A DNA stretch of 64,000 nucleotides, taken from IMG/VR virus record IMGVR_UViG_3300023278_002893, positions 62,001 through 126,000 of that record; one strand, 5' to 3'. The translations under genes and the position numbers were made by a program. Positions 4,553 to 60,563 of the stretch are shown here, in pieces (positions within the stretch are counted from its first letter, which is position 1; every line of letters begins with the position of its first letter). Below the pieces are notes generated by a model that saw only the letters and a program-made list of their open reading frames with translations, ran no database searches and was not told where the DNA came from.

Positions 4553-5111
4553 TCTCTACGACCCTACGCACGTTCTTGAATCCTGCTCGCTCCATGCGAG
4601 GCTTAAAAGACTCGAACGTGTACATAGCCTTGTGCGCTCCCCACTCTGTGTACTGCCCTGGGTGGGGGACTTCACCGTCTGGCATACAATCCCTCTCCCA
4701 GTCAGGGTTGCCGGAGATCTTCTCCCAACCATCGGGACCGCCAGGGTAATCGGAAAATCCTCCAAACAACGCGATCATGGTCTCTTCAGTGGAATGAGTC
4801 CCATCTACATAAGCGTGACATAAAAAGTCCAAATCAGGCATCTTGAGCCTAATGATTCCACTTGGTTTCAAAACTCTATACCACTCCCTAAGGACAGCGC
4901 CCACCTCTGTGTAGGAGAAATGTTCAACCGTATGGGCAGAGTAAAGATCATCCACCTCGTTGTCTGATATCCAATCCAGATTACGAACGTCTGACTCCCT
5001 ATCAACATTACCCACCTTTACAGCATCAACGTGGTAATATCCGGGCTCTCCGTGCGGGCCAGACCCCAACTCTATACGAACAGGACTACTTGCTGACGTC
5101 AGGAACTGCAT
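4518..5111 (-). CDS. Methyltransferase type 11-like protein
   Basis: IELGSG, YSAHTVEH, EWYRVLKPSG..PD. Confidence 0.7.
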   Translation of the reverse strand: MQFLTSASSPVRIELGSGPHGEPGYYHVDAVKVGNVDRESDVRNLDWISDNEVDDLYSAHTVEHFSYTEVGAVLREWYRVLKPSGIIRLKMPDLDFLCHAYVDGTHSTEETMIALFGGFSDYPGGPDGWEKISGNPDWERDCMPDGEVPHPGQYTEWGAHKAMYTFESFKPRMERAGFKNVRRVVENDWELHVTGTK

Positions 5112-7068
5112 CTGATACTTTCTTTTTAGTAGTCTGCCTGAATGACAAGCCTTTCTTATCTTTGGACAGACTAACTGTTACCTTCGACCCCGCACCAACG
5201 TCCTCTCCCAAGATCGCCTTGGCAAGGGGGGTGTTAAGGAACTTCTTTACTGCCCTTCGCATCGGGCGAGCGCCGAACTTCTTGTCGATGCCTCGATCTA
5301 AGAGGAAGTTTTTGGCACCCAGATTGAAAGTAAGAACCAACCCTCGGGATTTCTTGACCTGCTCGTTGATCTCGGCGAGGAGAATATCCAGAATGTGCAT
5401 GTAATCTCCACGCTCCAGCAATCGGAAATGAATCACATCATCAACCCGGTTCAAGAACTCCGGTTTGAACTTCTTCTTCAGTGCGGCCGAGCGTGCCTTG
5501 GTAGTCTTGGTCTCGTCCGCCTCGTGCTCCCCACCAAACCCCATAGTCTTGCCTACATTATCTACTTCCTTAACGCCGATGTTCGAGGTCATGATAATGA
5601 AGCACTGCTTGAAGGAAACTTTCTTACCCCCCTTACTCTCCGTAAGAACACCATCATCGAGGATCTGGAGGATGCGCTCGTGAAAATTACCATGTGCCTT
5701 CTCGATCTCGTCAAAGAGAACAACCGAGAAAGGATTCTTAGATACTTCCTTAGTCAGATGACCACCCTCATCATACCCCACATACCCAGGAGGGGAACCA
5801 GTTAGTTTGGCTACCTCATGAGACTGCTGGTATTCCTGACAATCTATCCGCACAAGATGTGCGTCCAGAACCTCAGCGAGAGCCTTCGCAGCCTCGGTCT
5901 TACCTACACCTGTATTACCGGTAAGCAGGAAGCAACCTAGGGGCTCGTGGTCACGTTTAAGTCCCACCGAAGCTCGCTGGATAGCATCTGTCACCATCTC
6001 TATAGCCTCATCCTGACCAACAATGTGCTTCTTCAACTTGTCGGAAAGATTAAGTAGGGTTTCCTTAGGAACATCCTCAAATCTCTTTCTTTTAGAAGAC
6101 GCAGACTGGCTCTCTTCATTCCCCGCCGCTGACATTCTTCTATTGTTCTTAGTCTTAGATCGCTGTCTATCCTTGAAATCTGCACGGATCTTCTTCAGAT
6201 CGACATTCTCCAACTTGAGAAACGGATTATAATCTATAGCGATTTCATACAGCTCCTGTACCAGCTTAGCGGGCTTAGTGTGCTGCGTAACGCCCATAGT
6301 ATCCAACAGATGGAAGATATCAGCAAAGTCTTCGATGCACAGATGTACTATCAGAAGATGATAGCCGCTAATGGTCTCAAATGGCGTACCTCCCAACAGC
6401 AATGATGCGGTATCTTCGTCTGCTTCATACTGACGAATGTTCAATCCCACACCTATCTTCTTCCAACGGTGTCCAATCAGCTCATAGGGCACATCGTCTT
6501 TGCCCCCACCGCCCCCGCCCGGGCTATCCCTGAAGGGGTTATCGGGAGGTGATTCGTCCTGGGGACCATCTAAAGAGCCGATCTCATCATCATCAAAGAA
6601 GGGATTCCTAGGCCCCTCTACCGCATCCGGCGCGCGGGTAATAACCGCAGGGCCGAAGTCGGAAAGCGGAGGGTCCTGATCCCATAGAGAATTACTGGTG
6701 AGGGGACGAGCATCCTCATCCTCCCGCACAGTGGCTTCGATCTTCATTACATTGTTATCATTTATCATGATATTCTCCGGCAAAAACGCCGGACAATACT
6801 TATAGACCAACGACAACGCTTCGGCCCTAATCTCTTCGACCCTCGTATAGAGTTCTTTTCTCCTGCGAAGGTGGTAGAAAAAAGGTGAGGAATTTGCCAT
6901 GCAAGTTCCTAGCACAAAATCCTCATAAAACACCCGATACATGAGTCCCTTATCGGGGGAGAGCAACGATAACTTATCATTTACATCCCCATCAGGGTAT
7001 TCGAGGATCATGACATGGAAATCCGCAGACTCCAAAAATACCTTATGTGTAACATAAGCTTTGGACAT
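5086..7068 (-). CDS. Clp/Hsp100 ATPase with a single (D2-type) AAA+ module and an unrecognised N-terminal half
   Basis: IVGQDEA, Walker A GNTGVGKT, pore loop GSPPGYVG, Walker B VVLFDEIEKA, MTSN, MGF loop, FKPEFLNRVD, sensor-2 GARPMRR; no D1 module. Confidence 0.85.
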   Translation of the reverse strand: MSKAYVTHKVFLESADFHVMILEYPDGDVNDKLSLLSPDKGLMYRVFYEDFVLGTCMANSSPFFYHLRRRKELYTRVEEIRAEALSLVYKYCPAFLPENIMINDNNVMKIEATVREDEDARPLTSNSLWDQDPPLSDFGPAVITRAPDAVEGPRNPFFDDDEIGSLDGPQDESPPDNPFRDSPGGGGGGKDDVPYELIGHRWKKIGVGLNIRQYEADEDTASLLLGGTPFETISGYHLLIVHLCIEDFADIFHLLDTMGVTQHTKPAKLVQELYEIAIDYNPFLKLENVDLKKIRADFKDRQRSKTKNNRRMSAAGNEESQSASSKRKRFEDVPKETLLNLSDKLKKHIVGQDEAIEMVTDAIQRASVGLKRDHEPLGCFLLTGNTGVGKTEAAKALAEVLDAHLVRIDCQEYQQSHEVAKLTGSPPGYVGYDEGGHLTKEVSKNPFSVVLFDEIEKAHGNFHERILQILDDGVLTESKGGKKVSFKQCFIIMTSNIGVKEVDNVGKTMGFGGEHEADETKTTKARSAALKKKFKPEFLNRVDDVIHFRLLERGDYMHILDILLAEINEQVKKSRGLVLTFNLGAKNFLLDRGIDKKFGARPMRRAVKKFLNTPLAKAILGEDVGAGSKVTVSLSKDKKGLSFRQTTKKKVSDAVPDVSK

Positions 7069-7085: not shown

Positions 7086-7967
7086 CTAGAGGTTAGATGC
7101 AGCCCTTATTACTTTGATCGCTTCTGCATGGGTTAACTCTTCAAATACCTGCTTGGGGGCACCTAGATCATCCACAATACCGGGCGCTAGTTGGATCATG
7201 TCCGGTTGATTCTTACCTCTCTTCTCCGCAAGACTCTCCAACGCACCCTTCTGAGTAGAAGTAATACCCTTTTTAGAATTAGGATCCTCAAAAGGATTAG
7301 GACGCTCGCTCGAGGTGCTCGCGGCTACCGCTGCCGGCGGGCGGGGTGGTGGAGCAGGGCGCTGCACGGCTTGCGGTGGGGCTGGAGGAGAGGGCCTCTG
7401 CACGGCAGCGGGGGCAGGGACTGTTGGACGTGGAGGCCCGCCTGCAAACGGCTGTGCGGGCGGATCTGCGGGCGCTGGGGGGCGCGACGGCGGAGTTGGG
7501 CGAGGCGGCGGGGCGAGCGGGAGCGGAGACGGTTTAGACGCAGCGGTCGTCGAGGGGCGACGAGTTGGAGGGGTGAACGGAGCAGGCACGTCGTCCAGAT
7601 AAAGCTCAAGAGCCACACCCAACTGACTTGCACACTTCTTCAACCCATCACTGGCAGCTCCCTTCAGGGCGGCACCTGTATCAACACCTTTGTTAATGTT
7701 GCAGGAACCAAACTGCTGCTTAACTATAGGACTACCCTGCGAGTCCCACACCTTCAACTCAACCAAAGCGACAGCCAGGCCGTCAAAGATTTCGTGCTTA
7801 ATTATCGTAGTATCCCAAGCATAGTCGAATGCTTCGTTTAGAAGCTGAATCGCGTGCTCTGTTCCGATGTAATCGAAGGTCATTCCATGACCACCCTGTC
7901 GTTGCTTAACCCTTGAAGGGTCTAGGGGTCTTTGGATAACCTCTTTTGCCTGATCGCTAATTGACAT
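7086..7967 (-). CDS. Rad52/Rad22 (Sak-like) single-strand annealing protein with Pro-rich linker
   Basis: VKQRQGG..FDYI..AIQLLNEAFDYAW...ALKGAASDGLKKCASQLGVALELY, followed by a Pro/Ala-rich tract and a small C-terminal domain. Confidence 0.8.
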   Translation of the reverse strand: MSISDQAKEVIQRPLDPSRVKQRQGGHGMTFDYIGTEHAIQLLNEAFDYAWDTTIIKHEIFDGLAVALVELKVWDSQGSPIVKQQFGSCNINKGVDTGAALKGAASDGLKKCASQLGVALELYLDDVPAPFTPPTRRPSTTAASKPSPLPLAPPPRPTPPSRPPAPADPPAQPFAGGPPRPTVPAPAAVQRPSPPAPPQAVQRPAPPPRPPAAVAASTSSERPNPFEDPNSKKGITSTQKGALESLAEKRGKNQPDMIQLAPGIVDDLGAPKQVFEELTHAEAIKVIRAASNL

Positions 7968-21009: not shown

Positions 21010-21612
21010 TTATCCTCTCGTACTCTTAGTCTGGATTTTATCAACAATTCCAAACTCCATTGCTTCCTCCGCAGACATCCATTTGTCTCTGTCGTAGAGG
21101 GATTTACACTCTTCCACCGTTTTACCCGTGTTCAGTGCTAAATCTTTCATCAAGATCTCATTAACGGTTTCCATCTCACGCATCGTGATCTGGACATCGG
21201 TAATATCGCCCTTCGCTCCGCCAGATACCTGATGCATCATAATACGTGCTCTCGGCATAGAATAACGCTTACCTTTTGTACCTCCCGCCAAAAGAAAACA
21301 CCCCATGCTAGCAGCAGACCCAACACATAAAGTATGAATGTCGGGCTTGATGTATTCCATCGTATCATATATCCCAAGACCTGCGGACACCGACCCACCA
21401 GGTGAGTTGATGTACATAAATATGTCCTTGTTGGGATCGTCATTCTCCAAAAAGAGGAGTTGACCTATGATAAGATTGGCCATCGCATCGCTAACTGGGG
21501 TGCCTAGGACTATAATCCTATCTCTCAATAACCTTGAGTAAATATCGTACGCTTTCTCACTATTGCCATCCTTTTCGATAACAACCGGCATTGGAATTCC
21601 TGCTTCAGACAT
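21010..21612 (-). CDS. clpP: ATP-dependent Clp protease proteolytic subunit
   Basis: YDIYSRLLRDRII, YINSPGG, catalytic AASMG, IMMHQ, DRDKWMSAEEA.EFGIVD. Confidence 0.95.
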   Translation of the reverse strand: MSEAGIPMPVVIEKDGNSEKAYDIYSRLLRDRIIVLGTPVSDAMANLIIGQLLFLENDDPNKDIFMYINSPGGSVSAGLGIYDTMEYIKPDIHTLCVGSAASMGCFLLAGGTKGKRYSMPRARIMMHQVSGGAKGDITDVQITMREMETVNEILMKDLALNTGKTVEECKSLYDRDKWMSAEEAMEFGIVDKIQTKSTRG

Positions 21613-22105: not shown

Positions 22106-22915
22106 TTACTCGTGGTAGGTTTTAATTTCGCCTATGTAGTTGTTCTTCATATGTTCTTTGTGTGCGCGAGTCGCCGCATTTCGTGCCGCTTCCACCTCTT
22201 TCTCTGTGGCATTTTTGAGACGGCCGTCAGCAAGCATATGATGACGCCTACACAAAGGAAGCCAATTAGAACCATCCAAAGGATTATTTTCATGATTGCC
22301 GTCTAAATGATGGCAATCCACACTCTTAACGTTCTTACCTTCGACTTTATCACAACCAGGGAAGAAACATTTGATTGGATCACCGAAGATTTTCTTCAGC
22401 CGAAACTTACCCTTACCAAAGTAGAGGTGTCGGGAGCGTCCGCCCTTCCAAGAATTACTTTTATCTCCAGACTGGGCTTCTGAAATTCTCCTCCGCCGCT
22501 CGTCGGTAACAACGACTTGACTTAATTTAAGTCTCGTGGCGTCACTGACCTCATGTCCTAACAAACTGGCACTGATGGCTAATTTGTGTTCTTCGGAAAG
22601 CTTCGAACCCAATCGAGCCTGTCGAATCTTCTCTTTGGTTTCTTCAGAGTGCTTCTTTCCTGTATTAGCAATGGCAAGCTTGAGGGCTTTGGGTGTCAGA
22701 TACTTCTCTGGCTTCTTGCCTCTCTTCTTTAAGATAAACCTCAAGCGAGACAGCTGCATTCGCCTTCTTGTCAAGGGTGATACAACTGGTGCGTTGGGAA
22801 ACTGCTCCCTGTATTTCTTTGAATTCAGGTCATGTGTTTTTAGATGACCGGGTAATGATTTATATCTGTTGAAACAAATTTCACATTTTACTGTTGGAGT
22901 TAATTTCTGTGCCAA
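22106..22915 (-). CDS. Free-standing HNH homing endonuclease with NUMOD3 repeats and N-terminal Zn finger
   Basis: CEIC...HLKTH; GKKHSEETKEKI-type repeats; CHHLDGNHENN..NWLPLCRRHH. Confidence 0.8.
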   Translation of the reverse strand: MAQKLTPTVKCEICFNRYKSLPGHLKTHDLNSKKYREQFPNAPVVSPLTRRRMQLSRLRFILKKRGKKPEKYLTPKALKLAIANTGKKHSEETKEKIRQARLGSKLSEEHKLAISASLLGHEVSDATRLKLSQVVVTDERRRRISEAQSGDKSNSWKGGRSRHLYFGKGKFRLKKIFGDPIKCFFPGCDKVEGKNVKSVDCHHLDGNHENNPLDGSNWLPLCRRHHMLADGRLKNATEKEVEAARNAATRAHKEHMKNNYIGEIKTYHE

Positions 22916-22954: not shown

Positions 22955-23617
22955 TTATAGCATAATCCTAGCATTATCTATTTCTAAATCACGCACTTCT
23001 GAAACCAGAATAAAGCCAGGAAGTAACTCACCCGTCGTAAGATAATACAGATAGTCTAAAAAATCAAAGGCGGCTTTGGTGGCTACCAAATCATCTCTTC
23101 GAAAGAAACAAACAGCTTGCTTTGACCAACCTTTCTGCCCCGGGGCCAGAAGACAAATAATATCTATGTTAGTATTATTCTCCTTACTATTCAAACTATC
23201 AGCCACCCGTATTTGAACCTTTGCAAGATCTTGTGAAATCAGTAATATAAGAATTGCTGGTAGGTCACTAGAATCTAAGAAATCTGGTAAAGTTCTCAGA
23301 GATAGAAATTTTCCAGTAGCTTCTTCCATCACATTTTGTAACCACCACTCTGTGTAAGAGGTAGTCCGTTTTTTATGTTCTGCCAGTATCCACTGACTCT
23401 CTTTCGTCTCTATTAGAAAATCAGGCCTTTTACCAATATCTGATATATCTTTTGGATCATCTATATACAAATAAACTTTGTCTCCAAACCATTTTTCTGA
23501 CCAGGGTGGGGGGTTTTGTTGTTTCTTCAACTGCCTCTTATGGTTTTCCCTTTTTCTATAACGATCTTCTTTCGACTTTCTCGACAATTTCCGCTTCTTC
23601 TTATTTACCATCATCAC
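22955..23617 (-). CDS. Hypothetical protein (AT-rich, basic N-terminus)
   Basis: ORF track; composition differs from flanks. Confidence 0.55.
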   Translation of the reverse strand: MMMVNKKKRKLSRKSKEDRYRKRENHKRQLKKQQNPPPWSEKWFGDKVYLYIDDPKDISDIGKRPDFLIETKESQWILAEHKKRTTSYTEWWLQNVMEEATGKFLSLRTLPDFLDSSDLPAILILLISQDLAKVQIRVADSLNSKENNTNIDIICLLAPGQKGWSKQAVCFFRRDDLVATKAAFDFLDYLYYLTTGELLPGFILVSEVRDLEIDNARIML

Positions 23618-26600
23618 TCACATCCGCTATGACCGCAATCGGCGCACTTCACACAACCACTCTCCATAATCAATTTCTTAGACTGACAGGAGCGGCATCT
23701 TGAAACCTCTAAATACTCTTCGTCTGTAATATACTTCTTCAGTACCCGCAGGATCGCTTTACTGAACGCAGTTACCTCCCCATCACACTTCGTGAGCTGG
23801 GAAACCAGCGCGTTGAGTGGAGCCCCGTGTCTAAGACTGGTGGATAAGAGACGGGTGACCATTCGATGTTCATCATTCAGAAGGAGCTGAGCTACGTTTT
23901 TGATTGTCCAGGTGTCCTCACCTGTACCAATCACGAGGTTATATCTACCGTGCCCATTCCTCCTCAGCATACCACCTGTGCGGGATGAGGATATTTCGAT
24001 ATGTTCCTCCGGGAAACAGAAAACCTCATAGGGTTTCCCATGGAGAAGACCAACCAAAACCTTCCACTTCTCGCCCTTTACACTAACCGTATGAATGTCA
24101 CAATCCAGATCATCGGGCCGTACAGGGGCATTCATCGTTACCACCGTTTTTGGCCTGGAACCTGGATTCTTGGACGGATTCTTGAGGGTCTCCAAGATCT
24201 GAGTCTTGGAACCGTCCCGATATACGGCGGTGGATTTGATATTACTATCGAAAGCACCTATATAAGCACCCATGATATCGTCTACAGTCGCTTCAGGCGG
24301 GAGATTGATGGTATTATGAGATACTATACCAGATACAAGATAGTTATGTGATTCTTCAACCTCCACATCATACATTGAGATTTTGCCTGAATTCTCTATT
24401 GAAGAAATCTTCATCACCTTGCCCAAAATTTCTAATCCTAATTCTTCTGCCAATTCCCGAGTACAATGTTGGGATCTTCTTTGTCGTAAATTACGGACAG
24501 CAGAATAACGAGGATGGTCCGATTTGATAGGCAGTGTGAACACATCTTCATGCTCGAATGCAACCAGGTGTGCTCTACCGCCATTAACTTTGGGAGAACA
24601 TTTGTGTAACTCTAAAGGTGTGATGGTTTGCATTAGTTCATCAGAAACCATTACGGAATGAACGTAATAGCCGTGAGACTTAACTAGTTTCTTACCACAA
24701 TAAACACGGGGCTTTCCAAAAGAACGAAGCATTTCTGCGACTTGATACGCCAGTGCTTGGGATTTACCTTCGTACACAACCAAACCCCTTCCCGGCCGCA
24801 AATAACCATCTAAAGTAAGTCCTTCGATAAAATGTCTCTTTTCAGCAAAACTTCCTTGTAAAATCTGATCAGGAACTCTCTTATCATCACTCCTATAACC
24901 AATCAATTCTCTAAGATATCTAACTAATACACGAGAGGTAAGTCTGTGCTCAACCACACCCGTCCGCGAATCTATATGAACTTCTGGAATAACGCCAAAT
25001 ACATCTTCAGCGAGTGTGTTGTAGAAATTCCCCACATTCCCTGAATCTTTTTCGTATAAAGAAACCTTACCAGTGGATTCCTCCAAATGACCATCCGCAG
25101 CCAACATTCCTAAAAGTTTAGCTAGATAAACCGACATTTTATCCGGTAAATTTATAAAGTTCGCATTAGTTTTCCTATCAAAATCTATATTTATTGTACG
25201 AGAATTCTCAACATCAAAAACCTCAAAATCGTCGTTGATAAATATCAAATCATCGGGAACTAGATCACCCAATGTTTTCCAACCCCCGATAGTTTTTACT
25301 TTATGAGAATCAGATGCGCCAGTTATGGATGATCCGTTTTGCAGAACAAGACTGGTTGCATCTTTCTCACCGGCACTGTAATGGGAAAGTACTTTACGAT
25401 GAATACCCTTCTCATCTATAACCATCAGATCCTGAAGCGGTTCCCCAAAAACATCAACACCGCGTGCGTTACCGCACTGCTCAATAGGTAAAATTCCTCT
25501 ATTAGTATTGATCAAAGTACCCCCAGCTAAACATTTACTCACACTAGAATCAACCTGCTCAGAAAACACCGCCTGCATCGCCAAGTGGTCTTGCCAGCTG
25601 ATGTCCTGAGCCTGCTCGAAGTACTTTGGCACCCTCTTATGTCGCCTTAGTTCCCGGAAATCGTGGTTGTATTCCGCAAAGTCAATACCGCGAGTCTCCA
25701 TCCATTCTAAAAATGAAGGGCAACCATCCATAATAGTTCCGATATTGGAATTCCGCTGATACGCCATAGCAAAATAAGGCTCGCACCCAGAAGAATAACC
25801 GGTAATAGTTCCAGTTGTTCCCGTAGGAGCTTGCGTAAGGATAGTGACATTCGCAATACCATGGGTCTTTAACTCCTTCTCCAGATCAGGTCTCTCCTTG
25901 AGAAGCTGCTGGATGAACTTACTCTTCTTGAACTTCTTGAAGTCGTAAGCTGGGAATGGACCAATCTCTTTGGCCATATCAATGGACGCTTCGTACGCTG
26001 TGTGCTTGATGAACTTGAGAATCTTCTTAGCCATTCCGCGGCCAGAATCTTGACTATAAATGTAATCCTTATCGGTGCGCATGGACATGCGGATTAACGC
26101 CTCGTGCATACCAATGGTTCCCAAACCTATGCGACGCTCTTTCTGGGTGTTCTCATCAATCTTCTCAACTCCAGTCTCGTTGAGAAGGGTAATCCAGTTA
26201 AGACTACGCACCAAAACAAAGACTGCTTCCCTCAACCCATCCCAATCCACCGAACCGTCCTCATTTACAAACTCAGGAAGGACAAGACTGGACAAGCAAC
26301 ACACTGACCATGGTGGAAGAACCTGCTCTGCACAAGGATTGGTTGCGTCTAACGGATTAAAATATTCCCCATTGTGATAAGCACGTGCCCTATCTACGAA
26401 AAAGATACCAGGGCACCCATCCTCCCATGCATTGGTACAGATACGTCTAAACCACTCATATGCGGTAAGGTGATAGGAACTCTTGACAAGTTTTAGATGC
26501 TTAGTATTCCTAAAAGGAACCTCATTCGTAGCCTCATGTAGTGCTATTTCTTCATCTGGCGCGCACACTGAAATGGGAATAACAGTCTCCACGCCGGGCA

Positions 26601-27387
26601 TTGTGGGATCATACATAGTCAATTCATAATCCCAGAGCGCCCAGGTCTTTTCTTCCCAACTCAACTTCCACGGCTTCTTCGACTGACGCTTAACCTGGCG
26701 CATAAAATTATCTGAAATAGCGACAGAAACATTGAATGTCTGCCATGGATAGGGGTTAGTCCATTGCCACTGCTCGAACATACTCTCATCGGTGATCACT
26801 GCAAACTTGCGAAGATTCTCCCAATTGCCTCGGGACTTCTTCGTAATAAACTTCAGAAGACCGGGGTGGGTATCATTCAGAATACCCATATTAGCGCCGC
26901 TACGATTACCTCCCTGCTGAATATTAGAGGAAGCGTATCCCATAGAAGTAATGAAACCTTCAGGGCCACTTGCGCGCGCATTGGCACCCTTACACCAAGC
27001 GCCTGCCGGGCGCAAGCTGGAGAAGTTGATCCCCGTGCCTCCCCCATGTGCCTGGATATGGAAGTGAATCCGCTGGGCCTCAGAGATCTCCTCCCGGCTG
27101 TCCCCAATACCTAGGACAAAACAATTGAACATGTTCTTGATCCCCGTACCTGCTTGGGCAAGAGGACGTCCTGCGTACATGATCTTCTTCTCTTCGCACA
27201 GGGTCTGCGCGAGGGCTCTTCGGTGGTCCTCATCGTTCTGATAAATATAGTTATTTGTACGATTAAATGTTTCAAAAATATCCTTCTCGACCGGGAGACC
27301 GGAGTCGTCTTTGAGGTAATAACGGGAACCCGCAATAGACTCGTGAGCGGGATTAGTGAAGTAAGTTTTAGCTGTGTACTTACCCAT
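23614..27387 (-). CDS. nrdJ: Class II (B12-dependent) ribonucleotide reductase, intein-containing
   Basis: NCFV, GGGTG.NFS.LRP, TNPCAEQ..CCL, RRIGLG, APTGT, DSSVSK/TIN, C-terminal TSCPD-like domain and CxxC...ESGCVKCADCGHSGC; no beta-subunit gene nearby. Confidence 0.9.
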   Translation of the reverse strand: MGKYTAKTYFTNPAHESIAGSRYYLKDDSGLPVEKDIFETFNRTNNYIYQNDEDHRRALAQTLCEEKKIMYAGRPLAQAGTGIKNMFNCFVLGIGDSREEISEAQRIHFHIQAHGGGTGINFSSLRPAGAWCKGANARASGPEGFITSMGYASSNIQQGGNRSGANMGILNDTHPGLLKFITKKSRGNWENLRKFAVITDESMFEQWQWTNPYPWQTFNVSVAISDNFMRQVKRQSKKPWKLSWEEKTWALWDYELTMYDPTMPGVETVIPISVCAPDEEIALHEATNEVPFRNTKHLKLVKSSYHLTAYEWFRRICTNAWEDGCPGIFFVDRARAYHNGEYFNPLDATNPCAEQVLPPWSVCCLSSLVLPEFVNEDGSVDWDGLREAVFVLVRSLNWITLLNETGVEKIDENTQKERRIGLGTIGMHEALIRMSMRTDKDYIYSQDSGRGMAKKILKFIKHTAYEASIDMAKEIGPFPAYDFKKFKKSKFIQQLLKERPDLEKELKTHGIANVTILTQAPTGTTGTITGYSSGCEPYFAMAYQRNSNIGTIMDGCPSFLEWMETRGIDFAEYNHDFRELRRHKRVPKYFEQAQDISWQDHLAMQAVFSEQVDSSVSKCLAGGTLINTNRGILPIEQCGNARGVDVFGEPLQDLMVIDEKGIHRKVLSHYSAGEKDATSLVLQNGSSITGASDSHKVKTIGGWKTLGDLVPDDLIFINDDFEVFDVENSRTINIDFDRKTNANFINLPDKMSVYLAKLLGMLAADGHLEESTGKVSLYEKDSGNVGNFYNTLAEDVFGVIPEVHIDSRTGVVEHRLTSRVLVRYLRELIGYRSDDKRVPDQILQGSFAEKRHFIEGLTLDGYLRPGRGLVVYEGKSQALAYQVAEMLRSFGKPRVYCGKKLVKSHGYYVHSVMVSDELMQTITPLELHKCSPKVNGGRAHLVAFEHEDVFTLPIKSDHPRYSAVRNLRQRRSQHCTRELAEELGLEILGKVMKISSIENSGKISMYDVEVEESHNYLVSGIVSHNTINLPPEATVDDIMGAYIGAFDSNIKSTAVYRDGSKTQILETLKNPSKNPGSRPKTVVTMNAPVRPDDLDCDIHTVSVKGEKWKVLVGLLHGKPYEVFCFPEEHIEISSSRTGGMLRRNGHGRYNLVIGTGEDTWTIKNVAQLLLNDEHRMVTRLLSTSLRHGAPLNALVSQLTKCDGEVTAFSKAILRVLKKYITDEEYLEVSRCRSCQSKKLIMESGCVKCADCGHSGCE
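24313..25533 (-). mobile_element. Intein with LAGLIDADG homing endonuclease (407 aa) in nrdJ
   Basis: Starts CLAGGTLI after VSK; ends YDVEVEESHNYLVSGIVSHN before Thr+1; LAGLIDADG blocks LLGMLAADG and FIEGLTLDG; AT-richer than the exteins. Confidence 0.92.
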
Positions 27388-50735: not shown

Positions 50736-52736
50736 TTACGGATCACCTGTAATAGTGGCGCTTAGATCTACTGGGAATACTCTATTGGCTAGAGCATTCA
50801 TATCGAAGAAGTCCCGGACAGCGGAGACTTCTGCGGGGAGGGAAACTGTTCCACCAGAACCCGTAATAATTGCTGACATGTCGAACTCTCCTTGAAGTCC
50901 AATTACGGAGGCAATGCAATTTCGTACCGCCTCATCTAATGTAGCGAAAGAAGTAAGGTTTCCTAAGCGACTTACCCGACCGGCTGCGAAATCTCCAAAC
51001 AATCCGGAGGTGATTTCACGAAAGGATCTAACATTGATCTTCCAATTCTCTGTACTGTCACCGATGAACGCATCCTGAGTACCATTGACGTAGAAGTAAT
51101 CTAGGAGCTGTCCTTCTAGTTGTATTCGAATCTCCTGAATATCTAATTCTCTGCCCCCTCTGAGCTCCGCTGCGGTTATCGAATTGCGAGCAGGTGACAC
51201 ACGTGGGAGTCTACGTAAAGCTTTGATACGTGCAGGGAGATCTACATTTGGGGCACCTGCTGAAATAGCCGCACCTAAATTCAGACCACGGAAAGGCGAG
51301 AAAACAACACTAATAGTATCTGTTGTCAGGAATGTGGGTAGTTGCGGAAGCATAGGAGTGAATCTAACTAAAATAGAATCCATTGTATAGAATATTTCTT
51401 TCTGGTTTATAGTAGCGCCGAGATCGGCGTCTATAAAAGACAATATGTTAGCACCCAGATCACCTACATGTTGTGCGGTCGCAGTTGCGGAAAGGGTTAG
51501 GTTTGCGGAACCTCCTGCACAAGTGGGGCTACCTATGGTGGCGCGGATGTCAGACGCATTGAGGGTACTGATAGTTAGAATAGCAGTAACGAAAGTCTCC
51601 GAGGCCCGGAGAAATGCAGAAAGATCTGCGGTGTCACGAAGAGATTCGATGGTCGCGGGCAGGTTGTGAAGATTAGAGTTGGAAGAAATAGAAGCAAGAA
51701 GATTACTGGGGTGGAAAGGCTCTAAGGTGGCTGCCAAAAACCTATCGTGCTCACCCAAAAGCCAAGCGCTTGTGGTGGCTGCGAGAGTCTTAGAGGAAAG
51801 GAAAGTAATGGTGGCTGGGAGATCCGCTTCAACTTCTATCTCCAGACCGATTGTGGCCTTTAGATCAGCAGGGACGAGACCCAACAGCGACACAGGTAGA
51901 TCTATCAAATCCTTACTGGAACTTAGGAACGCCGAAAGATCCGACTCATCAAGGGGATCTCCTGTAATGGTGGCTGTTAGGAAATCCTCCATGCGGGAAG
52001 AAAGGGTTGCTGGTATATTTAGTTGGGCCGCTGAAAAACCTGTAACATATGCGAATAGCTTAGGGGCCGCGAGACCAAGCATTGTTCCGGGCATATCCCT
52101 ATACTGAAAGGCAAAAATGTCGGCGGGAACATCAAATTTCTGAACTGATTGGATAAGGCCTGGAAGATCGTGGGGAGCCCAGATAATAGCACCCAAGTTG
52201 GTTCCGTGTTGGGAGAACACAGTTGCTGCCAGATCAGGAGCTGCTATCCCTAGGATTATTCCTCCCAAATCTTTTTGGGTAATCTGTAAACGAGCACCGA
52301 GATCAAGTTGTGCTAGAACACCTGTGATAGAAGCAGGCAAATCTGAAGAAAACAGTCCGAAGATTACAGCCTGAAGTTCTGGTAGGAATGCTACTGGAAA
52401 AACACACGCGGGAAGATCAAATGCTTCCTGAGCCCTAATAAACAAAGCCAGATCTTCCGTACCTGTCTGTACGGCACGCATAACTGCGCGAAGATCTGGA
52501 AAGTTATATGCAATAGGGGGCTTGCGAACGATACCTTCGATAATGGTAAAGTCTGAAATAAAAGAAATACCAGACTGAGTTTGATCTGAGGCTGGAGTAG
52601 GGGTACTTCCCAACACGGCCTGGATATGAGGGCCGGTATGGGCAGATATAATAGAGCGTATCAACGCCCCCGCGTCTTCACGACCGGCATTATATAGGGC
52701 ACTATTATATGTATTCCTATTATAAGTACCTGCCAA
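50736..52736 (-). CDS. Repeat-rich putative virion fibre protein
   Basis: N-terminal YNRNTYNSALYN; about 30 degenerate D/N-L-x-A-x-I repeats at ~12-aa spacing. Confidence 0.6.
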   Translation of the reverse strand: MAGTYNRNTYNSALYNAGREDAGALIRSIISAHTGPHIQAVLGSTPTPASDQTQSGISFISDFTIIEGIVRKPPIAYNFPDLRAVMRAVQTGTEDLALFIRAQEAFDLPACVFPVAFLPELQAVIFGLFSSDLPASITGVLAQLDLGARLQITQKDLGGIILGIAAPDLAATVFSQHGTNLGAIIWAPHDLPGLIQSVQKFDVPADIFAFQYRDMPGTMLGLAAPKLFAYVTGFSAAQLNIPATLSSRMEDFLTATITGDPLDESDLSAFLSSSKDLIDLPVSLLGLVPADLKATIGLEIEVEADLPATITFLSSKTLAATTSAWLLGEHDRFLAATLEPFHPSNLLASISSNSNLHNLPATIESLRDTADLSAFLRASETFVTAILTISTLNASDIRATIGSPTCAGGSANLTLSATATAQHVGDLGANILSFIDADLGATINQKEIFYTMDSILVRFTPMLPQLPTFLTTDTISVVFSPFRGLNLGAAISAGAPNVDLPARIKALRRLPRVSPARNSITAAELRGGRELDIQEIRIQLEGQLLDYFYVNGTQDAFIGDSTENWKINVRSFREITSGLFGDFAAGRVSRLGNLTSFATLDEAVRNCIASVIGLQGEFDMSAIITGSGGTVSLPAEVSAVRDFFDMNALANRVFPVDLSATITGDP

Positions 52737-52782
52737 TTTTATCTCCTACAATTATTCTATTTTATATGACCCCTCTCAGTTA

Positions 52783-55700
52783 TTAGTCGGGAGTAACCTT
52801 CAATGTGTGGCCTGCTGAAATATCCACCCAAACATCCCCAGCATTCAAAGAACCCGACGACGTAGGCAATCCTGGCAAGTTCAAGTTTTGAGTGAAGGTA
52901 CCGCTGATAGAAGAAATGTCATTAGGCGTGGAAGCTACCGGATCTATAACCTCAAGACTAAAGTGAATAAACGTATCAGGGGAGGCACTAGAACCAAGAG
53001 TGAGGGTAGTACCCTGTGTGTGTAAAACACCGGGAGTAAATATATCACCCTCTACGACGTCAAGAACAGGAGTGATTGCCTGTTGCCTCAAATCAGATGT
53101 AAGATTAGGAGCGCCTCTCCAAGAACCCACGGTGGCACCGTTCTTACTAATAAAGAATGTTCGATCGCCGGTCGAGCCTGTAGGGAAAGACCCTCCATAA
53201 CTCACCCTTACTTTATTAATTCCTGCGGGTATGACAAATCTTCCCTCCTGCGCAGTGTCAAAAAAACCATCCGTATCAAAATGTACAGTATCAAAAGAAA
53301 GTGTGCCATCGCCGTTAAACGCGATGGCGCCGGAGTCAACGTCGATCCCACTAGAGCTGGCTACCTTCGCTCCCCTGAAACCTGCGGAAGAGCCGGGGCT
53401 AAGGGGAATACCTTGAAGAGTTATGGTGTCTGAAAATATACCAGATGCAGTGATAATAGATTTATCATCGATTGCCGTACTTGCGGTACCTATTGTGATA
53501 CCATCGGTAAAGGTACCTGTTACTGCAGTAAGTTCTCCAGTACCATCTAACTCAAGAGGCTTGCCGCCCGCTGTCGTTATAGTCCCATCCCCGCTGTCAT
53601 AAGCGTCTTGAAGAGTTCCACCCCCGCCCCCTCCGCCCCCGGTAGTAATCGTTACCTGACCGCCGCCGTCATCTGTTAAAGTACCAGTAGTAACTACAAT
53701 GGTATTTACATTAGATACAGTAGGAACACCGTCAGTTTCTTTGACAGTCAAAGCGGCGCCGCCACTTGTACCTGTAGAAACAGGAGTTCCTGAGATTGTC
53801 AGAGAGTCTGAATATATACCCGAAGACAAGACGAGGGGGTCAGACACACTCGCTTGCTCGCCACTGACCGTCATGATCTGTCCATCTTCTGTTATGGTTA
53901 CTGAACCTGCACCTGCTGCAGTAACCGAACCGGTGATGGAATTGATTTCAGTAACTCCAGAGTCTGTAGAAACAGGAATACCCGAAACAGTCAGGCTGTC
54001 GGACACCGCACCGCTAGTGGTTGTAAAATGAACGGCATCTAGATTCTCTACAGTTGCGGTACCTGTAACTGTAATATCAGTAAATACGAGAGAATCGGAG
54101 AGTTCGGTCATAACCGGAATACCCGAAACCGTTGCTGACTGGCTGATCTCTACAATATCTGCATCAAGCTGGTGAGTAGTAATGTTATCACTATTGATGG
54201 TAGTAAATGACACATCCGGCGATCCGGGGGGAGGCGACATGCCCCAAATAATCAATGAGCCATCCGTATTAGTAATGGTACCCCCGTTTGTTCTTCGCGC
54301 ATATAAATCGAAATCCTTGAAGGTAAGAACATTATCTAAAGTGCGGAACATCATAGTAGGTCGATATAAAACATCATCAAAAACAGATCCCTCATTAAAG
54401 GGGTGCTGTCCTGAATCTACACTATAATCTTCTCCATCTGTAACATTTTTTATCTTGTATCCAGCGGCAGTGGTATCCGTAGTCGTAGTAAAACCAGCAA
54501 TTCCAATAACTAACAACTGTTCTCGTTGGCGAGGAGTATACGTCTGAGAATATGCATTAAGTTTAGCGGACGTGGAAGATGAAATAGATTGATCCGCGGC
54601 GTCCCTAACTCCCTGAATCTGATCAAACGCTGACGTATTGACTACAAAAAATCTAGCTCTCTGTGAAGCTGAAGTTGAAGAAAATGCAATATTAGTGCTC
54701 TGCTCCATCTTCAAAATATGAGAACCCGCTGTTAGGGTTTCAATAACTGCGCCTGGGCAGGGGGATTTAAAATTGTTACCTGACTCTGCCTGAGTCATCA
54801 GCTCGGCACCGTCCAATAAGAATCTATTTCGACCTTCAAGTCCCGCACTAAGCTCACTCCCAAATAGTATGAGGTATTCTCCAGTTTCGGGGGCGGTAAA
54901 ATTAAGCGATGAGAAAAATTTACCTGTGTTATCAAAATCTTCAAAGGCGGACTGGTCGTGTGTTTGTCCTGTATCACTTCCATTAGTAAACCAATAGTCA
55001 GTCCCCGACACAAGACTCATCTGCTCAAGAGGAACAGAAACAATACCCATTGCGCCGTATTGACCGGTATTAGCACCGGAACCTAACTTAACTTGAATCG
55101 TAGCGGCAGAAACAGCGTCACCTGTAATGACCTTAAATCCCGCAACCTCAGCACCGCCCGTATGCCCAATTTTTACAGAAGACTGGGCGGCGCCTTCAGC
55201 CATGACAGACGTACCAAACCGGGCACGTATGTCCAAACTACCCGTGCTGGCGCTCGAAGTATCAAAACCAATATTACCTCTATAAAAAACAAGAGACTCG
55301 CCTGCTGAAATAGGGGCCGTCGAATGAACTGTCGTAAATGCAGCTGAGCTCATAGTGCCGGTAGAGTCATCAAAACTACCAAGAGCTGATGGAAAACTAC
55401 TAACAGGTATTTCTCCAAAAGTTGCAATACCTGAAACAGTCACGTCTTCCTTGAAATCGGCCGGGCCAGAAACTACCAATGACCCCGATGCTGTAATCCA
55501 ACCCGCCTCGATTAGATTATCTACGGTGAGAGTACCTGAGATATTAACATTACCAAACTCATCTTTTGGAACAAACTCTGGCGAACCTGAGATACCTACA
55601 AAAGTTTCTAACGCAATGATGGCATCCTTAAGTTCGTTGTGGTGCTCCGCCATGACAGTGAAATCCACATTATCATTTTGGTTATGTGCGACTGCGGTCG

Positions 55701-55953
55701 TGCCTCCGGCCCCGCGCTCAGCCCCACTGAACGTGGTCTCCGAGAACCCGTCGTAACGAATAGCCTCCGCCAAAGTTATGTCGGAAGGATCTGAAAGAAT
55801 AGTAATGAATCCCGCAGTCGGATAGCCAGTCGTAGTAACAACGGGTATCGTAAGCGTAGTATTGTCAATAGAGGACGTTAGTTGGGTACGTCCGTTATTG
55901 ATCGCTAAGAATAACGAATCATTATCATCTTTAGAATTTGGAAAATTAGGCAT
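52783..55953 (-). CDS. Putative tail fibre / receptor-binding protein
   Basis: S/T/G-rich with TVSGIPV-type repeats and Gly linkers; C-terminal C1q-like segment FRGAKV...FDTVHFDTDGFF...RFVIPAG. Confidence 0.65.
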   Translation of the reverse strand: MPNFPNSKDDNDSLFLAINNGRTQLTSSIDNTTLTIPVVTTTGYPTAGFITILSDPSDITLAEAIRYDGFSETTFSGAERGAGGTTAVAHNQNDNVDFTVMAEHHNELKDAIIALETFVGISGSPEFVPKDEFGNVNISGTLTVDNLIEAGWITASGSLVVSGPADFKEDVTVSGIATFGEIPVSSFPSALGSFDDSTGTMSSAAFTTVHSTAPISAGESLVFYRGNIGFDTSSASTGSLDIRARFGTSVMAEGAAQSSVKIGHTGGAEVAGFKVITGDAVSAATIQVKLGSGANTGQYGAMGIVSVPLEQMSLVSGTDYWFTNGSDTGQTHDQSAFEDFDNTGKFFSSLNFTAPETGEYLILFGSELSAGLEGRNRFLLDGAELMTQAESGNNFKSPCPGAVIETLTAGSHILKMEQSTNIAFSSTSASQRARFFVVNTSAFDQIQGVRDAADQSISSSTSAKLNAYSQTYTPRQREQLLVIGIAGFTTTTDTTAAGYKIKNVTDGEDYSVDSGQHPFNEGSVFDDVLYRPTMMFRTLDNVLTFKDFDLYARRTNGGTITNTDGSLIIWGMSPPPGSPDVSFTTINSDNITTHQLDADIVEISQSATVSGIPVMTELSDSLVFTDITVTGTATVENLDAVHFTTTSGAVSDSLTVSGIPVSTDSGVTEINSITGSVTAAGAGSVTITEDGQIMTVSGEQASVSDPLVLSSGIYSDSLTISGTPVSTGTSGGAALTVKETDGVPTVSNVNTIVVTTGTLTDDGGGQVTITTGGGGGGGGTLQDAYDSGDGTITTAGGKPLELDGTGELTAVTGTFTDGITIGTASTAIDDKSIITASGIFSDTITLQGIPLSPGSSAGFRGAKVASSSGIDVDSGAIAFNGDGTLSFDTVHFDTDGFFDTAQEGRFVIPAGINKVRVSYGGSFPTGSTGDRTFFISKNGATVGSWRGAPNLTSDLRQQAITPVLDVVEGDIFTPGVLHTQGTTLTLGSSASPDTFIHFSLEVIDPVASTPNDISSISGTFTQNLNLPGLPTSSGSLNAGDVWVDISAGHTLKVTPD

Positions 55954-55971
55954 TAAGGTTCTCCAAGAGGA

Positions 55972-60551: not shown

Positions 60552-60563
60552 ATCATCCTTTTC

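What the first reader, a model, noticed from the sequence alone, without database searches (positions are those of the whole stretch)
5086..7068. Single-module ClpA/C-type ATPase with a ClpP-docking MGF loop and a novel N-terminal half
Seen: only the D2-type AAA+ module is present (GYVG pore loop, GARP sensor 2). It follows ~330 aa with no Clp-N repeats, no D1 and no ClpX Zn finger, and includes an acidic Pro/Gly linker. Established: ClpA/ClpC have two AAA modules, ClpB lacks the ClpP-binding loop, and [LIVM]G[FL] marks ClpP partners. KTMGFGG sits at that position. Inference: a phage-specific one-ring unfoldase whose N-domain selects substrates for the phage ClpP.
Basis: partly seen in the sequence, partly recalled or inferred. 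Interest (0 to 1): 0.65.

Follow-up and report, generated by a model that had tools for sequence, protein, structure and literature searches.

The report
One-ring phage Clp unfoldase family
An uncultured 298-kb phage encodes a Clp-type protein-unfolding motor with only one ATPase ring. It keeps the loop that plugs into ClpP, a protease the phage also encodes, and has a duplicated front domain of no described family, so it is a new variant of a well-known machine.

Summary
Window 5086-7068 (- strand) is a 660-aa ORF. Residues 335-645 are a complete D2-type Clp/Hsp100 module with Walker A/B, GYVG, sensor 1, Arg finger and GARP.

M509-G510-F511 lies at the tip of a helix-loop-helix, where ClpA has IGL and ClpC has xGF. 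This stretch matches ClpC best.

The first 330 aa hit nothing in Pfam, PHROGs or NCBIfam, and they are not a degenerate D1. They are two homologous copies of a ~105-aa beta-hairpin-plus-helices domain (hhalign 97.9%, E 5e-13), joined by an acidic Pro/Gly/Asp linker with two NPF motifs.

A profile search of 1.84 billion proteins found this N-half only in this family, on viral or metagenomic contigs.

The xGF loop is conserved across the family. A canonical clpP is present in 7 of 7 related IMG/VR virus records of at least 29 kb. In three distant relatives clpP lies directly downstream of the ATPase gene.

A Rad52-type annealing-protein gene always sits immediately upstream.

Best reading: a phage-specific single-ring unfoldase feeding ClpP. 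Binding, hexamer formation and substrates are untested, and the complex prediction gave no verdict.

The parts
5086..7068 (-). Whole gene: 660-aa single-module Clp/Hsp100-type ATPase (P0001)
   Evidence: ORF list and translation. At least 70 clusters of full-length homologues of about 650 aa.
6673..7068 (-). N-A domain, residues 1-132: beta-hairpin plus about five helices, ending in a CPAFLPEN motif and a conserved RPL..N..W extension
   Evidence: AF2 model of the N-half has pLDDT above 90 across the domain. Homologous to N-B by hhalign: probability 97.9%, E 5e-13. No Pfam or PHROG hit.
6496..6672 (-). Disordered acidic Pro/Gly/Asp linker, residues 133-191, with two NPF motifs (155-157, 177-179) and a Gly6 run
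   Evidence: pLDDT below 50. Composition and motif coordinates. The NPF motifs are nearly invariant in the close clade.
6169..6495 (-). N-B domain, residues 192-300: second copy of the same fold, ending in YNPFLKLE
   Evidence: hhalign against N-A. Model pLDDT 86-97. W202, L273, Y274 and N281 are conserved across the wide family.
6067..6168 (-). Basic Lys/Arg/Ser-rich connector, residues 301-334, between N-B and the AAA+ module
   Evidence: Composition. A helix continues to about residue 313, and residues 306-326 are low-confidence.
5425..6066 (-). D2-type AAA+ large subdomain, residues 335-548: Walker A 5896-5919, GYVG pore loop 5776-5787, Walker B 5701-5724, sensor 1 5581-5592, Arg finger in 5440-5457
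   Evidence: Pfam AAA_2, 173 bits. PDB phmmer E 1e-74 to ClpB NBD2, with ClpA and ClpC D2 at about 1e-72. Foldseek TM 0.82-0.88 to ClpB NBD2, and rmsd 2.4-3.7 over about 315 columns to ClpC and ClpA D2. Motif coordinates.
5530..5550 (-). K-T-M-G-F-G-G at the tip of a helix-loop-helix (H499-507 / H519-533): candidate ClpP-docking loop
   Evidence: MGF lies 16 residues after sensor 1. ClpA IGL 617-619 lies 14 residues after it. The segment's best PDB matches are ClpC and ClpC1, ahead of ClpE, then the ClpB chimera carrying the ClpA loop, then ClpB, then ClpA. G510 and G512 are invariant and F511 exceeds 90% in 36 sequences. [IVLMA]-G-[FIL] is present in 25 of 27 wide-family members.
5134..5424 (-). 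D2 small subdomain, residues 549-645, with sensor 2 GARP at 5263-5274
   Evidence: Pfam ClpB_D2-small, 65 bits. GARP is invariant.
7086..7967 (-). Upstream neighbour: Rad52/Rad22-family annealing protein, 293 aa. It has an N-terminal Rad52 domain, a Pro-rich linker with an NPF motif (224-226) and a small C-terminal domain. The gap to the ATPase start is 17 nt.
   Evidence: Pfam PF04098, 47.5 bits. The same gene pair occurs in L013-L019, L024, L027, L028, L029, L030 and L033.
21010..21612 (-). Phage clpP: 200 aa, the only ClpP in the 297.7-kb genome and the presumed proteolytic partner
   Evidence: PF00574 245 bits over positions 2-181 of 182. 51% identity to E. coli ClpP with the Ser/His/Asp triad conserved. 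50-58% identity to bacterial ClpPs.

Best explanation
The gene encodes a phage-specific, single-ring Clp/Hsp100 unfoldase.

- Motor: its only AAA+ module is a complete, presumably active D2-type motor of the ClpA/ClpB/ClpC kind.
- Assembly (inferred): six copies form a ring that pulls substrates through the GYVG pore loops.
- Docking (inferred): the flexible xGF loops (M509-G510-F511) plug into the hydrophobic clefts of a ClpP heptamer. Unfolded chains would then be fed to the phage's own ClpP (window 21010-21612), and possibly to the host's.
- Substrate choice (inferred): ClpA and ClpC have Clp_N plus D1 in front of D2. This protein instead has two copies of a roughly 105-aa beta-hairpin-plus-helices domain on a long acidic tether. 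These are most likely the substrate- or adaptor-binding module.
- Setting: the gene lies in the replication, recombination and repair block, always directly after a Rad52-type annealing-protein gene. Its clients are therefore more likely phage or host DNA-metabolism or proteostasis proteins than virion parts.

Shown: domain make-up, motif integrity, duplication, family distribution and gene context. Inferred: hexamer, ClpP docking, degradation and clients.
For: 1. D2 identity and intact catalytic and translocation motifs. All are invariant in 36 homologues.
2. Inteins in about 10 homologues sit exactly at Walker A (GK|T) and just before the pore loop. These are sites under the strongest constraint.
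3. MGF is at the ClpA IGL position. The loop segment ranks ClpC and ClpC1 first. S. aureus ClpC has A-G-F-G-G aligned to M-G-F-G-G.
4. The tripeptide is kept in 25 of 27 members whose N-halves are only 17-32% identical to this one.
5. The model shows a helix-loop-helix with a low-confidence, flexible tip.
6. The phage ClpP is canonical. By my reading of alignment A5, the pocket residues known from E. coli (Y60, Y62, F82, I90, M92, F112, L114) are replaced conservatively by F, Y, Y, L, V, Y and M.
7. This is the only Clp-type ATPase in the genome. The two other AAA+ proteins are a clamp-loader subunit and RuvB.
8. clpP lies 4, 2 and 70 nt downstream of the ATPase gene in three distant relatives (L027, L031, L033) and 3 kb downstream in L028.
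9. One canonical clpP is present in 7 of 7 IMG/VR records of at least 29 kb that carry the family.
Against: - No physical evidence exists. The ESMFold2 complex of two ClpP copies plus the D2 module scored ipSAE 0.25 against a mark of 0.32, which is no verdict either way.
- In this genome clpP lies 14 kb away, upstream of the ATPase gene.
- One relative (L030) has only a divergent ClpP-like gene nearby (24% identity). One 39-kb contig (L024) shows no clpP within about 10 kb.
- The co-occurring genomes are related to one another, so the counts are not independent.
- A lone D2 ring without D1 is not proven to hexamerise.
- ClpP could instead serve host ClpX or ClpA.
Confidence: 0.68

Rival explanations
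1. A ClpP-independent remodeller or disaggregase, similar to ClpB or to the one-ring mitochondrial Skd3/CLPB. The ring would unfold or dismantle complexes or aggregates and release them. Candidate clients are rings or filaments of the neighbouring Rad52-type protein on DNA. The xGF loop would be an inherited or secondary feature.
For: - The D2 module is as close to ClpB NBD2 as to ClpA or ClpC.
- Single D2-type rings that work without a protease are known (Skd3; my own knowledge).
- An HSP20 gene precedes Rad52-ATPase in L024, L027 and L033. Small heat-shock proteins are known partners of disaggregases.
- The Rad52 gene is a tighter and more constant neighbour than clpP.
- The complex prediction gave no support, which is not evidence against binding.
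Against: - The xGF tripeptide is conserved across very divergent members. This is hard to explain without a docking partner.
- clpP is immediately downstream in three lineages and present in all long records.
- There is no M-domain for DnaK coupling.
- This genome has no HSP20.
- Remodelling and degradation are not exclusive: ClpX and ClpA do both.
Confidence: 0.17
2. A virion-assembly chaperone or protease. The N-domains would be tail-assembly-chaperone-like modules that hold tape-measure, baseplate or other structural proteins. The ring, with ClpP, would process or remove them during morphogenesis.
For: - The only recurring fold resemblances of both N-domains are to phage assembly chaperones. 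In the PDB these are YqbN 3klu (Z 5.0), 3fgx, HK97 gpG 2ob9 and the ORF19 protein of a Vibrio phage-inducible island (5ir0) (Z 4.0-4.2).
- Many 'tail assembly chaperone' entries appear in the viral structure library, and a T4 baseplate-hub chaperone cluster appears in the ESM Atlas.
Against: - All matches fall below the aligner's own reliability range: Z below 8, Foldseek E above 0.09, TM below 0.55.
- The gene sits among PhoH, Rad52, RNase HII, Fpg, ribonucleotide reductase, DNA polymerase, helicase and clamp genes, not among structural genes.
- Its neighbours in relatives are likewise DNA-metabolism genes.
Confidence: 0.07
3. An ordinary two-ring ClpA/ClpC whose N-terminal half is a decayed Clp_N plus D1.
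For: In the full-length PDB search, the ClpA alignment ran on into residue 267 of the query, matching ClpA residue 375.
Against: - The N-half consists of two homologous domains of about 105 aa, each a beta-hairpin plus helices, not an alpha/beta P-loop fold.
- No AAA+ or Clp chain appears among the fold matches shown for the N-half.
- Residues 192-340 alone find no Clp chain even at E 10.
- None of 44 N-halves matches Clp_N or an AAA lid in Pfam at E up to 10.
- hhalign of N-A and N-B against ClpA and ClpB N+D1 gives probability below 1%.
- Foldseek alignments that extend beyond D2 have rmsd of 13-19 A.
Confidence: 0.02

Closest known systems
ClpC / ClpC1 (Firmicutes, Actinobacteria): D2 ring docking on ClpP
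   Same: - The D2 module is about 40% identical and superposes at rmsd 2.4-3.7 over about 315 columns.
- The ClpP-loop segment is the best PDB match. S. aureus ClpC has A-G-F-G-G where this protein has M-G-F-G-G, and the loops are of similar length.
   Different: - No Clp_N repeats, no D1 ring and no M-domain. The MecA, McsB and phospho-arginine binding surfaces are therefore absent.
- The front end is replaced by two copies of an undescribed domain plus an acidic tether.
ClpA (E. coli) with ClpP and ClpS
   Same: - D2 motifs are shared, and IGL 617-619 is at the equivalent position.
- It acts with a cognate ClpP.
   Different: - ClpA has one more ring.
- The ClpA loop is 8 residues shorter.
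- There is no ClpS in the phage genome and no Clp_N for it to bind.
ClpX (including the ClpX-ClpP pairs encoded by jumbo phages such as phage G and Atu_ph07)
   Same: - The overall logic is the same: one AAA+ ring, an N-terminal client or adaptor domain, and I-G-F-G loops docking on ClpP.
- Phage-encoded Clp pairs are documented (PMC12484599; PMC6102473; PMC7824862).
   Different: - The AAA+ module is of the ClpA/B/C D2 subfamily, with a ClpB_D2-small lid, not the ClpX subfamily. The NCBIfam ClpX model scores 29.7 bits against a cut-off of 359.
- There is no C4 zinc finger. The N-half has only three scattered Cys residues.
Skd3 / human CLPB and ClpB NBD2
   Same: - Skd3 is precedent for a lone D2-type ring with a non-Clp N-terminal module (one search lists CLPB homologue chains at E 1e-42 to 1e-44; architecture from my own knowledge).
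- The best sequence and fold match of the module is T. thermophilus ClpB NBD2, at 44% identity.
   Different: - Those are protease-independent disaggregases without an xGF tripeptide. E. coli ClpB has G-E-L-D-Y at that place.
- This family keeps xGF and travels with clpP.
Phage tail-assembly chaperones (HK97 gpG, XkdN/YqbN-like)
   Same: They are small beta-hairpin-plus-helices domains. They are the only recurring, though weak, fold neighbours of both N-A and N-B.
   Different: - Z is only 4-5 and sequence identity 5-8%, with no profile match.
- Membership is not established.
- None of these is known to be fused to an AAA+ motor.

Membership tests
Clp/Hsp100 D2-type AAA+ module (Pfam AAA_2 + ClpB_D2-small) | Profile matches above the curated cut-offs for both subdomains | tested here: met
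   AAA_2 scores 173.1 bits against 27. ClpB_D2-small scores 65.4 bits against 21.9.
Clp/Hsp100 D2-type AAA+ module (Pfam AAA_2 + ClpB_D2-small) | Walker A, Walker B, aromatic pore loop G-Y-V-G, sensor 1, Arg finger and sensor 2 G-A-R-P all intact | tested here: met
   Positions given. All are invariant in 36 homologues and largely kept in the wide family.
ClpA / ClpC (class I, two-ring Hsp100) | Two AAA+ modules, D1 and D2, in one chain | tested here: not met
   There is only one P-loop module. The ClpA and ClpB equivalog models score 306-314 bits against cut-offs of 993-1232 and align only to their D2 part. The N-half is not an AAA+ fold.
ClpA / ClpC (class I, two-ring Hsp100) | N-terminal Clp_N repeat domain | tested here: not met
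   No Clp_N hit in this protein or in 44 N-halves at E up to 10. hhalign against ClpA and ClpB N+D1 gives probability below 1%.
ClpP-partner unfoldases (ClpX, ClpA, ClpC, ClpE) | [LIVM]-G-[FL] tripeptide at the tip of the helix-loop-helix after sensor 1 | tested here: met
   MGF 509-511 lies 16 residues after MTSN. ClpA IGL lies 14 residues after MTTN. Secondary structure, loop homology to ClpC, conservation.
ClpP-partner unfoldases (ClpX, ClpA, ClpC, ClpE) | Physical, ATP-dependent docking on ClpP and activation of it | tested here: inconclusive
   The complex prediction scored ipSAE 0.25 and 0.23, below the 0.32 mark, which is no verdict. This needs biochemistry.
ClpP-partner unfoldases (ClpX, ClpA, ClpC, ClpE) | A cognate clpP in the same genome or operon | tested here: met
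   One canonical clpP in this genome. Present in 7 of 7 related records of at least 29 kb. Adjacent to the ATPase gene in L027, L031 and L033.
ClpX | ClpX-subfamily AAA+ module and N-terminal C4 zinc-binding domain | tested here: not met
   The ClpX models score 23-30 bits against cut-offs of 359-371. There is no Cys cluster in residues 1-330.
ClpB / Hsp104 disaggregases | Coiled-coil M-domain inserted in D1, and no ClpP tripeptide | tested here: not met
   There is no D1 or M-domain. The M-domain columns of ClpB are a gap in alignment A3. The xGF tripeptide is present.
ClpP serine protease (window 21010-21612) | PF00574 match, Ser-His-Asp triad, and conserved N-terminal and pocket residues | tested here: met
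   245.5 bits against a cut-off of 20.2. S102, H127 and D176 align to the E. coli triad, and the pocket positions carry conservative substitutions.
Rad52/Rad22 annealing proteins (window 7086-7967) | PF04098 match above the cut-off | tested here: met
   47.5 bits against 20.3. The upstream neighbours in relatives also match.
Phage tail-assembly-chaperone fold (for N-A and N-B) | Significant structural or profile similarity to gpG or XkdN-type chaperones | tested here: inconclusive
   The best values are Z 5.0, 4.2, 4.1 and 4.0, Foldseek E at least 0.09, and TM at most 0.55. No PHROG or Pfam match.

The most novel reading that the evidence does not exclude
The ATPase may be a dedicated partner of the Rad52-type annealing protein encoded just upstream.

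Its tandem N-domains would capture that protein, perhaps through the NPF motifs that both proteins carry in their disordered linkers. The ATPase's own NPF motifs would then act as tethers or pseudo-substrates.

The ring would strip annealing-protein rings or filaments from DNA and recycle them or, with ClpP, destroy them. This would be an AAA+ 'recombination-mediator recycler', a kind of machine not described for phage annealing proteins.

The basis is as follows:
- The gene pair has gaps of 2-17 nt in all 14 contexts that could be read. This holds across members whose N-halves are only about 20-30% identical, while the position of clpP varies.
- NPF motifs occur in both proteins of the close clade.

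No binding test could be run.
Probability: 0.2. Interest if true: 0.75.

Novelty: new variant of a known kind. Interest (0 to 1): 0.55.

Why it matters
Known ClpP-feeding motors are ClpX (its own AAA+ subfamily) and the two-ring ClpA, ClpC and ClpE.

A natural family would show that a lone D2-type ring, kept together with the docking loop and a clpP gene, is enough for a working protease partner. That would give a minimal, compact model of the D2 motor for mechanistic work.

The duplicated N-domain has no described family and no confident structural neighbour, so it is a candidate new client- or adaptor-binding module.

The family is confined to a lineage of uncultured phages of about 130-320 kb. 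It sits in their DNA-metabolism block next to a Rad52-type gene. This suggests that the phages run their own regulated proteolysis or remodelling during replication or recombination, which could be tested by heterologous expression.

It remains a variant of a very well-known machine, and no function has been shown.

Tried and rejected
- **Complex prediction.** Two ClpP copies plus D2 residues 330-650, using my own alignments, scored ipSAE 0.25 and 0.23 against a mark of 0.32. The tool's verdict is 'no answer', so this is neither support nor evidence against. It used the only job, so the N-half with the Rad52-type protein could not be tried.
- **D1-remnant lead.** phmmer ran the ClpA alignment back to query residue 267. 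I rejected this as evidence of a D1 remnant. Residues 192-340 alone find no Clp chain at E 10. hhalign against ClpA and ClpB N+D1 gives probability below 1%, though the target profile had only three sequences. No AAA+ chain appears among the fold hits.
- **Fold searches of the N-half model.** There was no significant match in the PDB by Foldseek (best E 0.73), the PDB by VIA-wide (best Z 5.0), the viral structure library BFVD (best E 0.09) or the ESM Atlas (TM at most 0.32). The tail-assembly-chaperone resemblance is kept only as a lead.
- **Other searches of the N-half.**
  - ESM Atlas feature search of residues 1-132: no usable hit.
  - Pfam on 44 N-halves at E up to 10: nothing consistent.
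  - tblastn against 50,697 phage records at E up to 1: no match.
- **Public sequencing runs.** None was listed for the gene, so there is no expression evidence and read laying was not used.
- **P0113 (492 aa).** It first looked like a one-N-domain form, but its gene starts at base 2 of the contig, so it is truncated.
- **Wider surveys.**
  - Single-protein scans for P0097 and P0075 found nothing in IMG/VR.
  - Metagenome loci could not be used as handles to search whole records.
- **Literature.** I found no paper on a phage one-ring D2-type Clp ATPase, or on a Rad52-Clp link.
Full report
**1. What is at the coordinates**

Window 5086..7068 on the - strand is one uninterrupted ORF of 660 aa with an ATG start. 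The window is bases 62001-126000 of a 297,725-bp IMG/VR virus record that CheckV rates as complete. All long ORFs in the window lie on the - strand.

The surrounding genes are mostly for DNA metabolism:
- PhoH, a Rad52-type protein, RNase HII and Fpg
- a ribonucleotide reductase and a family-A DNA polymerase
- an exonuclease, a DnaB-type helicase and a processivity factor

No cultured phage is close. The DNA polymerase is at most 31% identical to anything in 50,697 phage records.

**2. The AAA+ module**

Pfam places AAA_2 at residues 376-544 (173 bits) and ClpB_D2-small at 551-632 (65 bits). The NCBIfam ClpB, ClpA, ClpK, ClpV and ClpG models all align only with their second module and score far below their full-length cut-offs. 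ClpX and HslU score near noise.

Against the PDB, the module matches T. thermophilus ClpB NBD2 (E 1e-74), ClpA (2.5e-72) and ClpC or ClpC1 (about 1e-71).

The full-length AF2 model has pLDDT 73. It superposes on ClpB NBD2 with TM 0.82-0.88. It superposes on the D2 of ClpC, ClpC1 and ClpA at rmsd 2.4-3.7 A over about 315 columns. Alignments that try to extend into D1 have rmsd of 13-19 A.

All the expected motifs are present and invariant in 36 homologues:
- Walker A, 384-391
- GYVG, 428-431
- Walker B, 449-456
- sensor 1, 493-496
- R541
- GARP, 599-602

**3. The MGF loop**

M509-G510-F511 lies 16 residues after sensor 1 in a predicted helix-loop-helix (H499-507, H519-533). The tip has pLDDT below 50, as expected for a flexible loop.

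In E. coli ClpA, fetched from the K-12 record, IGL is at 617-619, 14 residues after the same motif. In ClpX, I-G-F-G is at 268-271.

I searched residues 484-560 alone against the PDB. ClpC and ClpC1 came first, then ClpE, then the ClpB chimera carrying the ClpA loop, then ClpB and ClpA. S. aureus ClpC has A-G-F-G-G aligned to M-G-F-G-G.

One nuance: E. coli ClpB has a segment of the same length as ClpA here and lacks only the tripeptide.

In the close family, G510 and G512 are invariant and F511 exceeds 90%. Two members have V-G-I-G. In the wide family, whose N-halves are only 17-32% identical to this one, [IVLMA]-G-[FIL] is present in 25 of 27 members.

**4. The N-terminal half**

Residues 1-330 match nothing in Pfam, PHROGs or NCBIfam. 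Scanning 44 family N-halves one by one at E up to 10 gave nothing consistent.

An AF2 model of residues 1-300, built from a 44-sequence alignment, reached pLDDT 84. It shows two compact domains with pLDDT above 90 and a disordered stretch at 133-191. Both domains have the same order of elements: a beta-hairpin, then four or five helices, then an N-P-x-L-type motif.

Profile-profile comparison of residues 1-132 with 192-296 gave probability 97.9% and E 5e-13 over about 100 columns. The 'novel half' is therefore a tandem duplication of one domain of about 105 aa.

The linker is rich in Pro, Asp and Gly. It carries two NPF motifs that are nearly invariant in the close clade. A basic connector (301-334) leads into D2.

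The N-half is not a decayed D1 or Clp_N:
- No AAA+ chain is among its fold matches.
- Residues 192-340 find no Clp chain at E 10.
- hhalign against ClpA and ClpB N+D1 gives probability below 1%.

Fold searches gave no significant neighbour. The only recurring weak matches, for both copies, are small phage assembly chaperones:
- YqbN 3klu at Z 5.0, and 3fgx
- HK97 gpG 2ob9
- the ORF19 protein of a Vibrio phage-inducible island (5ir0)
- several 'tail assembly chaperone' models
- a T4 baseplate-hub chaperone cluster

These values are below the aligner's stated reliability range, so I keep them only as a lead.

**5. Distribution**

A word-based search with residues 1-330 found 70 clusters, 46-77% identical in the N-half. 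Nearly all are about 650 aa with the same Pfam architecture, on contigs of up to 320 kb.

An exhaustive profile search of the N-half against 1.84 billion representatives found only 68 proteins at E up to 1e-3. They are same-architecture proteins of about 600-660 aa, intein-bearing ones of about 1000 aa, and fragments.

Other collections gave almost nothing:
- No match to the N-half in the INPHARED phage collection.
- Only one match among 185,579 species genomes. It is a 16-kb contig binned with an Altiarchaeales genome assembled from a metagenome, probably a mis-binned phage contig.

The family is, as far as these data go, phage-specific and undescribed. I found no paper on it. Phage-encoded ClpP, ClpX, ClpA-like and ClpS genes are already known in jumbo phages (PMC7824862; PMC6102473; PMC12484599).

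**6. The ClpP link**

The genome has one ClpP, at window 21010-21612. It scores 245 bits on PF00574, is 51% identical to E. coli ClpP, and is 50-58% identical to bacterial ClpPs. The triad is intact, and the E. coli pocket positions carry conservative aromatic or aliphatic replacements.

It sits in the DNA-metabolism block, not next to structural genes.

The 660-aa protein is the only Clp-type ATPase in the genome. The other two AAA+ genes are a clamp-loader subunit and RuvB.

clpP positions in relatives:

| Context | clpP position relative to the ATPase gene |
|---|---|
| L027, L031, L033 (distant relatives) | 4, 2 and 70 nt downstream |
| L028 | 3 kb downstream |
| Four close IMG/VR records | 15-18 kb away, same strand |
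| G007 (256-kb record) | about 10.7 kb away if the record's ends are joined |
| L024 (39-kb contig) | none within about 10 kb |
| L030 | only a divergent ClpP-like gene nearby (24% identity) |

In total, 7 of 7 IMG/VR records of at least 29 kb with the family have one canonical clpP. These genomes are related, so the counts are not independent.

The one complex prediction available (two ClpP copies plus D2) scored 0.25 against a mark of 0.32 and gives no verdict.

**7.

The ORF immediately upstream, window 7086-7967, is separated from the ATPase start by a 17-nt gap. It is a Rad52/Rad22-family protein (47.5 bits).

The same pair, with gaps of 2-17 nt, occurs in all 14 contexts I could read:
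- the window itself
- seven close IMG/VR loci
- the contigs of P0075, P0097, P0090, P0134, P0121 and P0100

Two of the distant contigs show HSP20-Rad52-ATPase-ClpP in a row. PhoH and a Holliday-junction endonuclease also recur nearby, so part of this is lineage synteny. Even so, Rad52 is the tightest and most constant neighbour, whereas clpP moves.

In the close clade, the Rad52-type proteins also carry one or two NPF motifs in their Pro-rich linkers. This is the basis of the 'novel case', which I could not test.

**8. Side evidence for function**

About ten homologues carry inteins at two sites: GK|T of Walker A and G|SPPGYVG before the pore loop. Each has C...HN plus T or S junctions. Inteins settle in sites that cannot drift, which fits an active ATPase-translocase.

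**9. Verdict**

- Architecture, phage specificity and a conserved ClpP-type docking loop with a travelling clpP are shown.
- ClpP binding, ring formation, degradation and substrate selection by the N-domains remain inferences.

It works like ClpX or ClpC with ClpP. It is not a member of ClpA/ClpC (two rings and Clp_N are not met), ClpX (subfamily and zinc finger are not met) or ClpB (M-domain not met). It is best filed as a new one-ring variant of the D2-type Clp/Hsp100 motors with a new, duplicated N-domain.

Noticed in passing
Homologues P0040, P0053, P0072, P0080, P0092 (site after K390 of P0001) and P0047, P0082, P0083, P0098, P0099 (site after G424): Inteins of 329-424 aa interrupt the ATPase at two sites. 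One is inside Walker A (GK|T). The other is just before the GYVG pore loop (KLTG|SPPGYVG). Each has C...HN junctions and a T or S as the +1 residue.
   Followed up: partly
window 7086-7967 (-) and window 6496-6672 (-): The Rad52-type protein (NPF at 224-226) and the ATPase linker (NPF at 155-157 and 177-179) both carry NPF motifs in disordered acidic or Pro-rich stretches. The motif recurs in both proteins of seven close relatives. What binds it is unknown.
   Followed up: partly
window 23614-27387 (-): The ribonucleotide reductase large subunit is 1257 aa. The PHROG match is split into two stretches, and an unrelated small hit lies at 981-1028. It probably carries an intein or other insert.
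   Followed up: no
window 22106-22915 (-): An ORF with NUMOD3 and ROS/MucR-like motifs, resembling a homing endonuclease, lies close to clpP.
   Followed up: no
window 50736-63938 (-): Four large ORFs of 666, 1056, 1200 and 1124 aa, plus one of 325 aa, have no PHROG match. GC skew shifts from about -0.18 to about 0, and AT skew turns positive, at about 50 kb. The genes nevertheless stay on the - strand.
   Followed up: partly
L035 (WJJK01000092.1, 16-kb contig): The only cellular-genome hit of the N-half is a contig in an Altiarchaeales genome assembled from a metagenome. Given the family's otherwise viral distribution, it is probably a mis-binned phage contig.
   Followed up: no
L032 (P0130, 450 aa); ESM Atlas cluster of 476-aa viral AAA_2 proteins; BFVD A0A6J5MDF8 (488 aa): Shorter relatives appear to have one N-domain plus D2. 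The BFVD hit aligns 92 columns at rmsd 2.1 A (Foldseek E 0.09). The neighbours of P0130 are neither ClpP nor Rad52-like. It is unclear whether the one-copy form is ancestral.
   Followed up: partly
window 6067-6168 (-), residues 301-334: A conserved Lys/Arg/Ser-rich connector lies between N-B and D2. Given the DNA-metabolism context, it could be a nucleic-acid-binding or flexible hinge segment.
   Followed up: no
L024, L027, L033 (distant relatives): An HSP20 gene lies upstream of the Rad52-ATPase pair, directly in L027 and L033 and about 7 kb away in L024. The window's own genome has no HSP20.
   Followed up: partly
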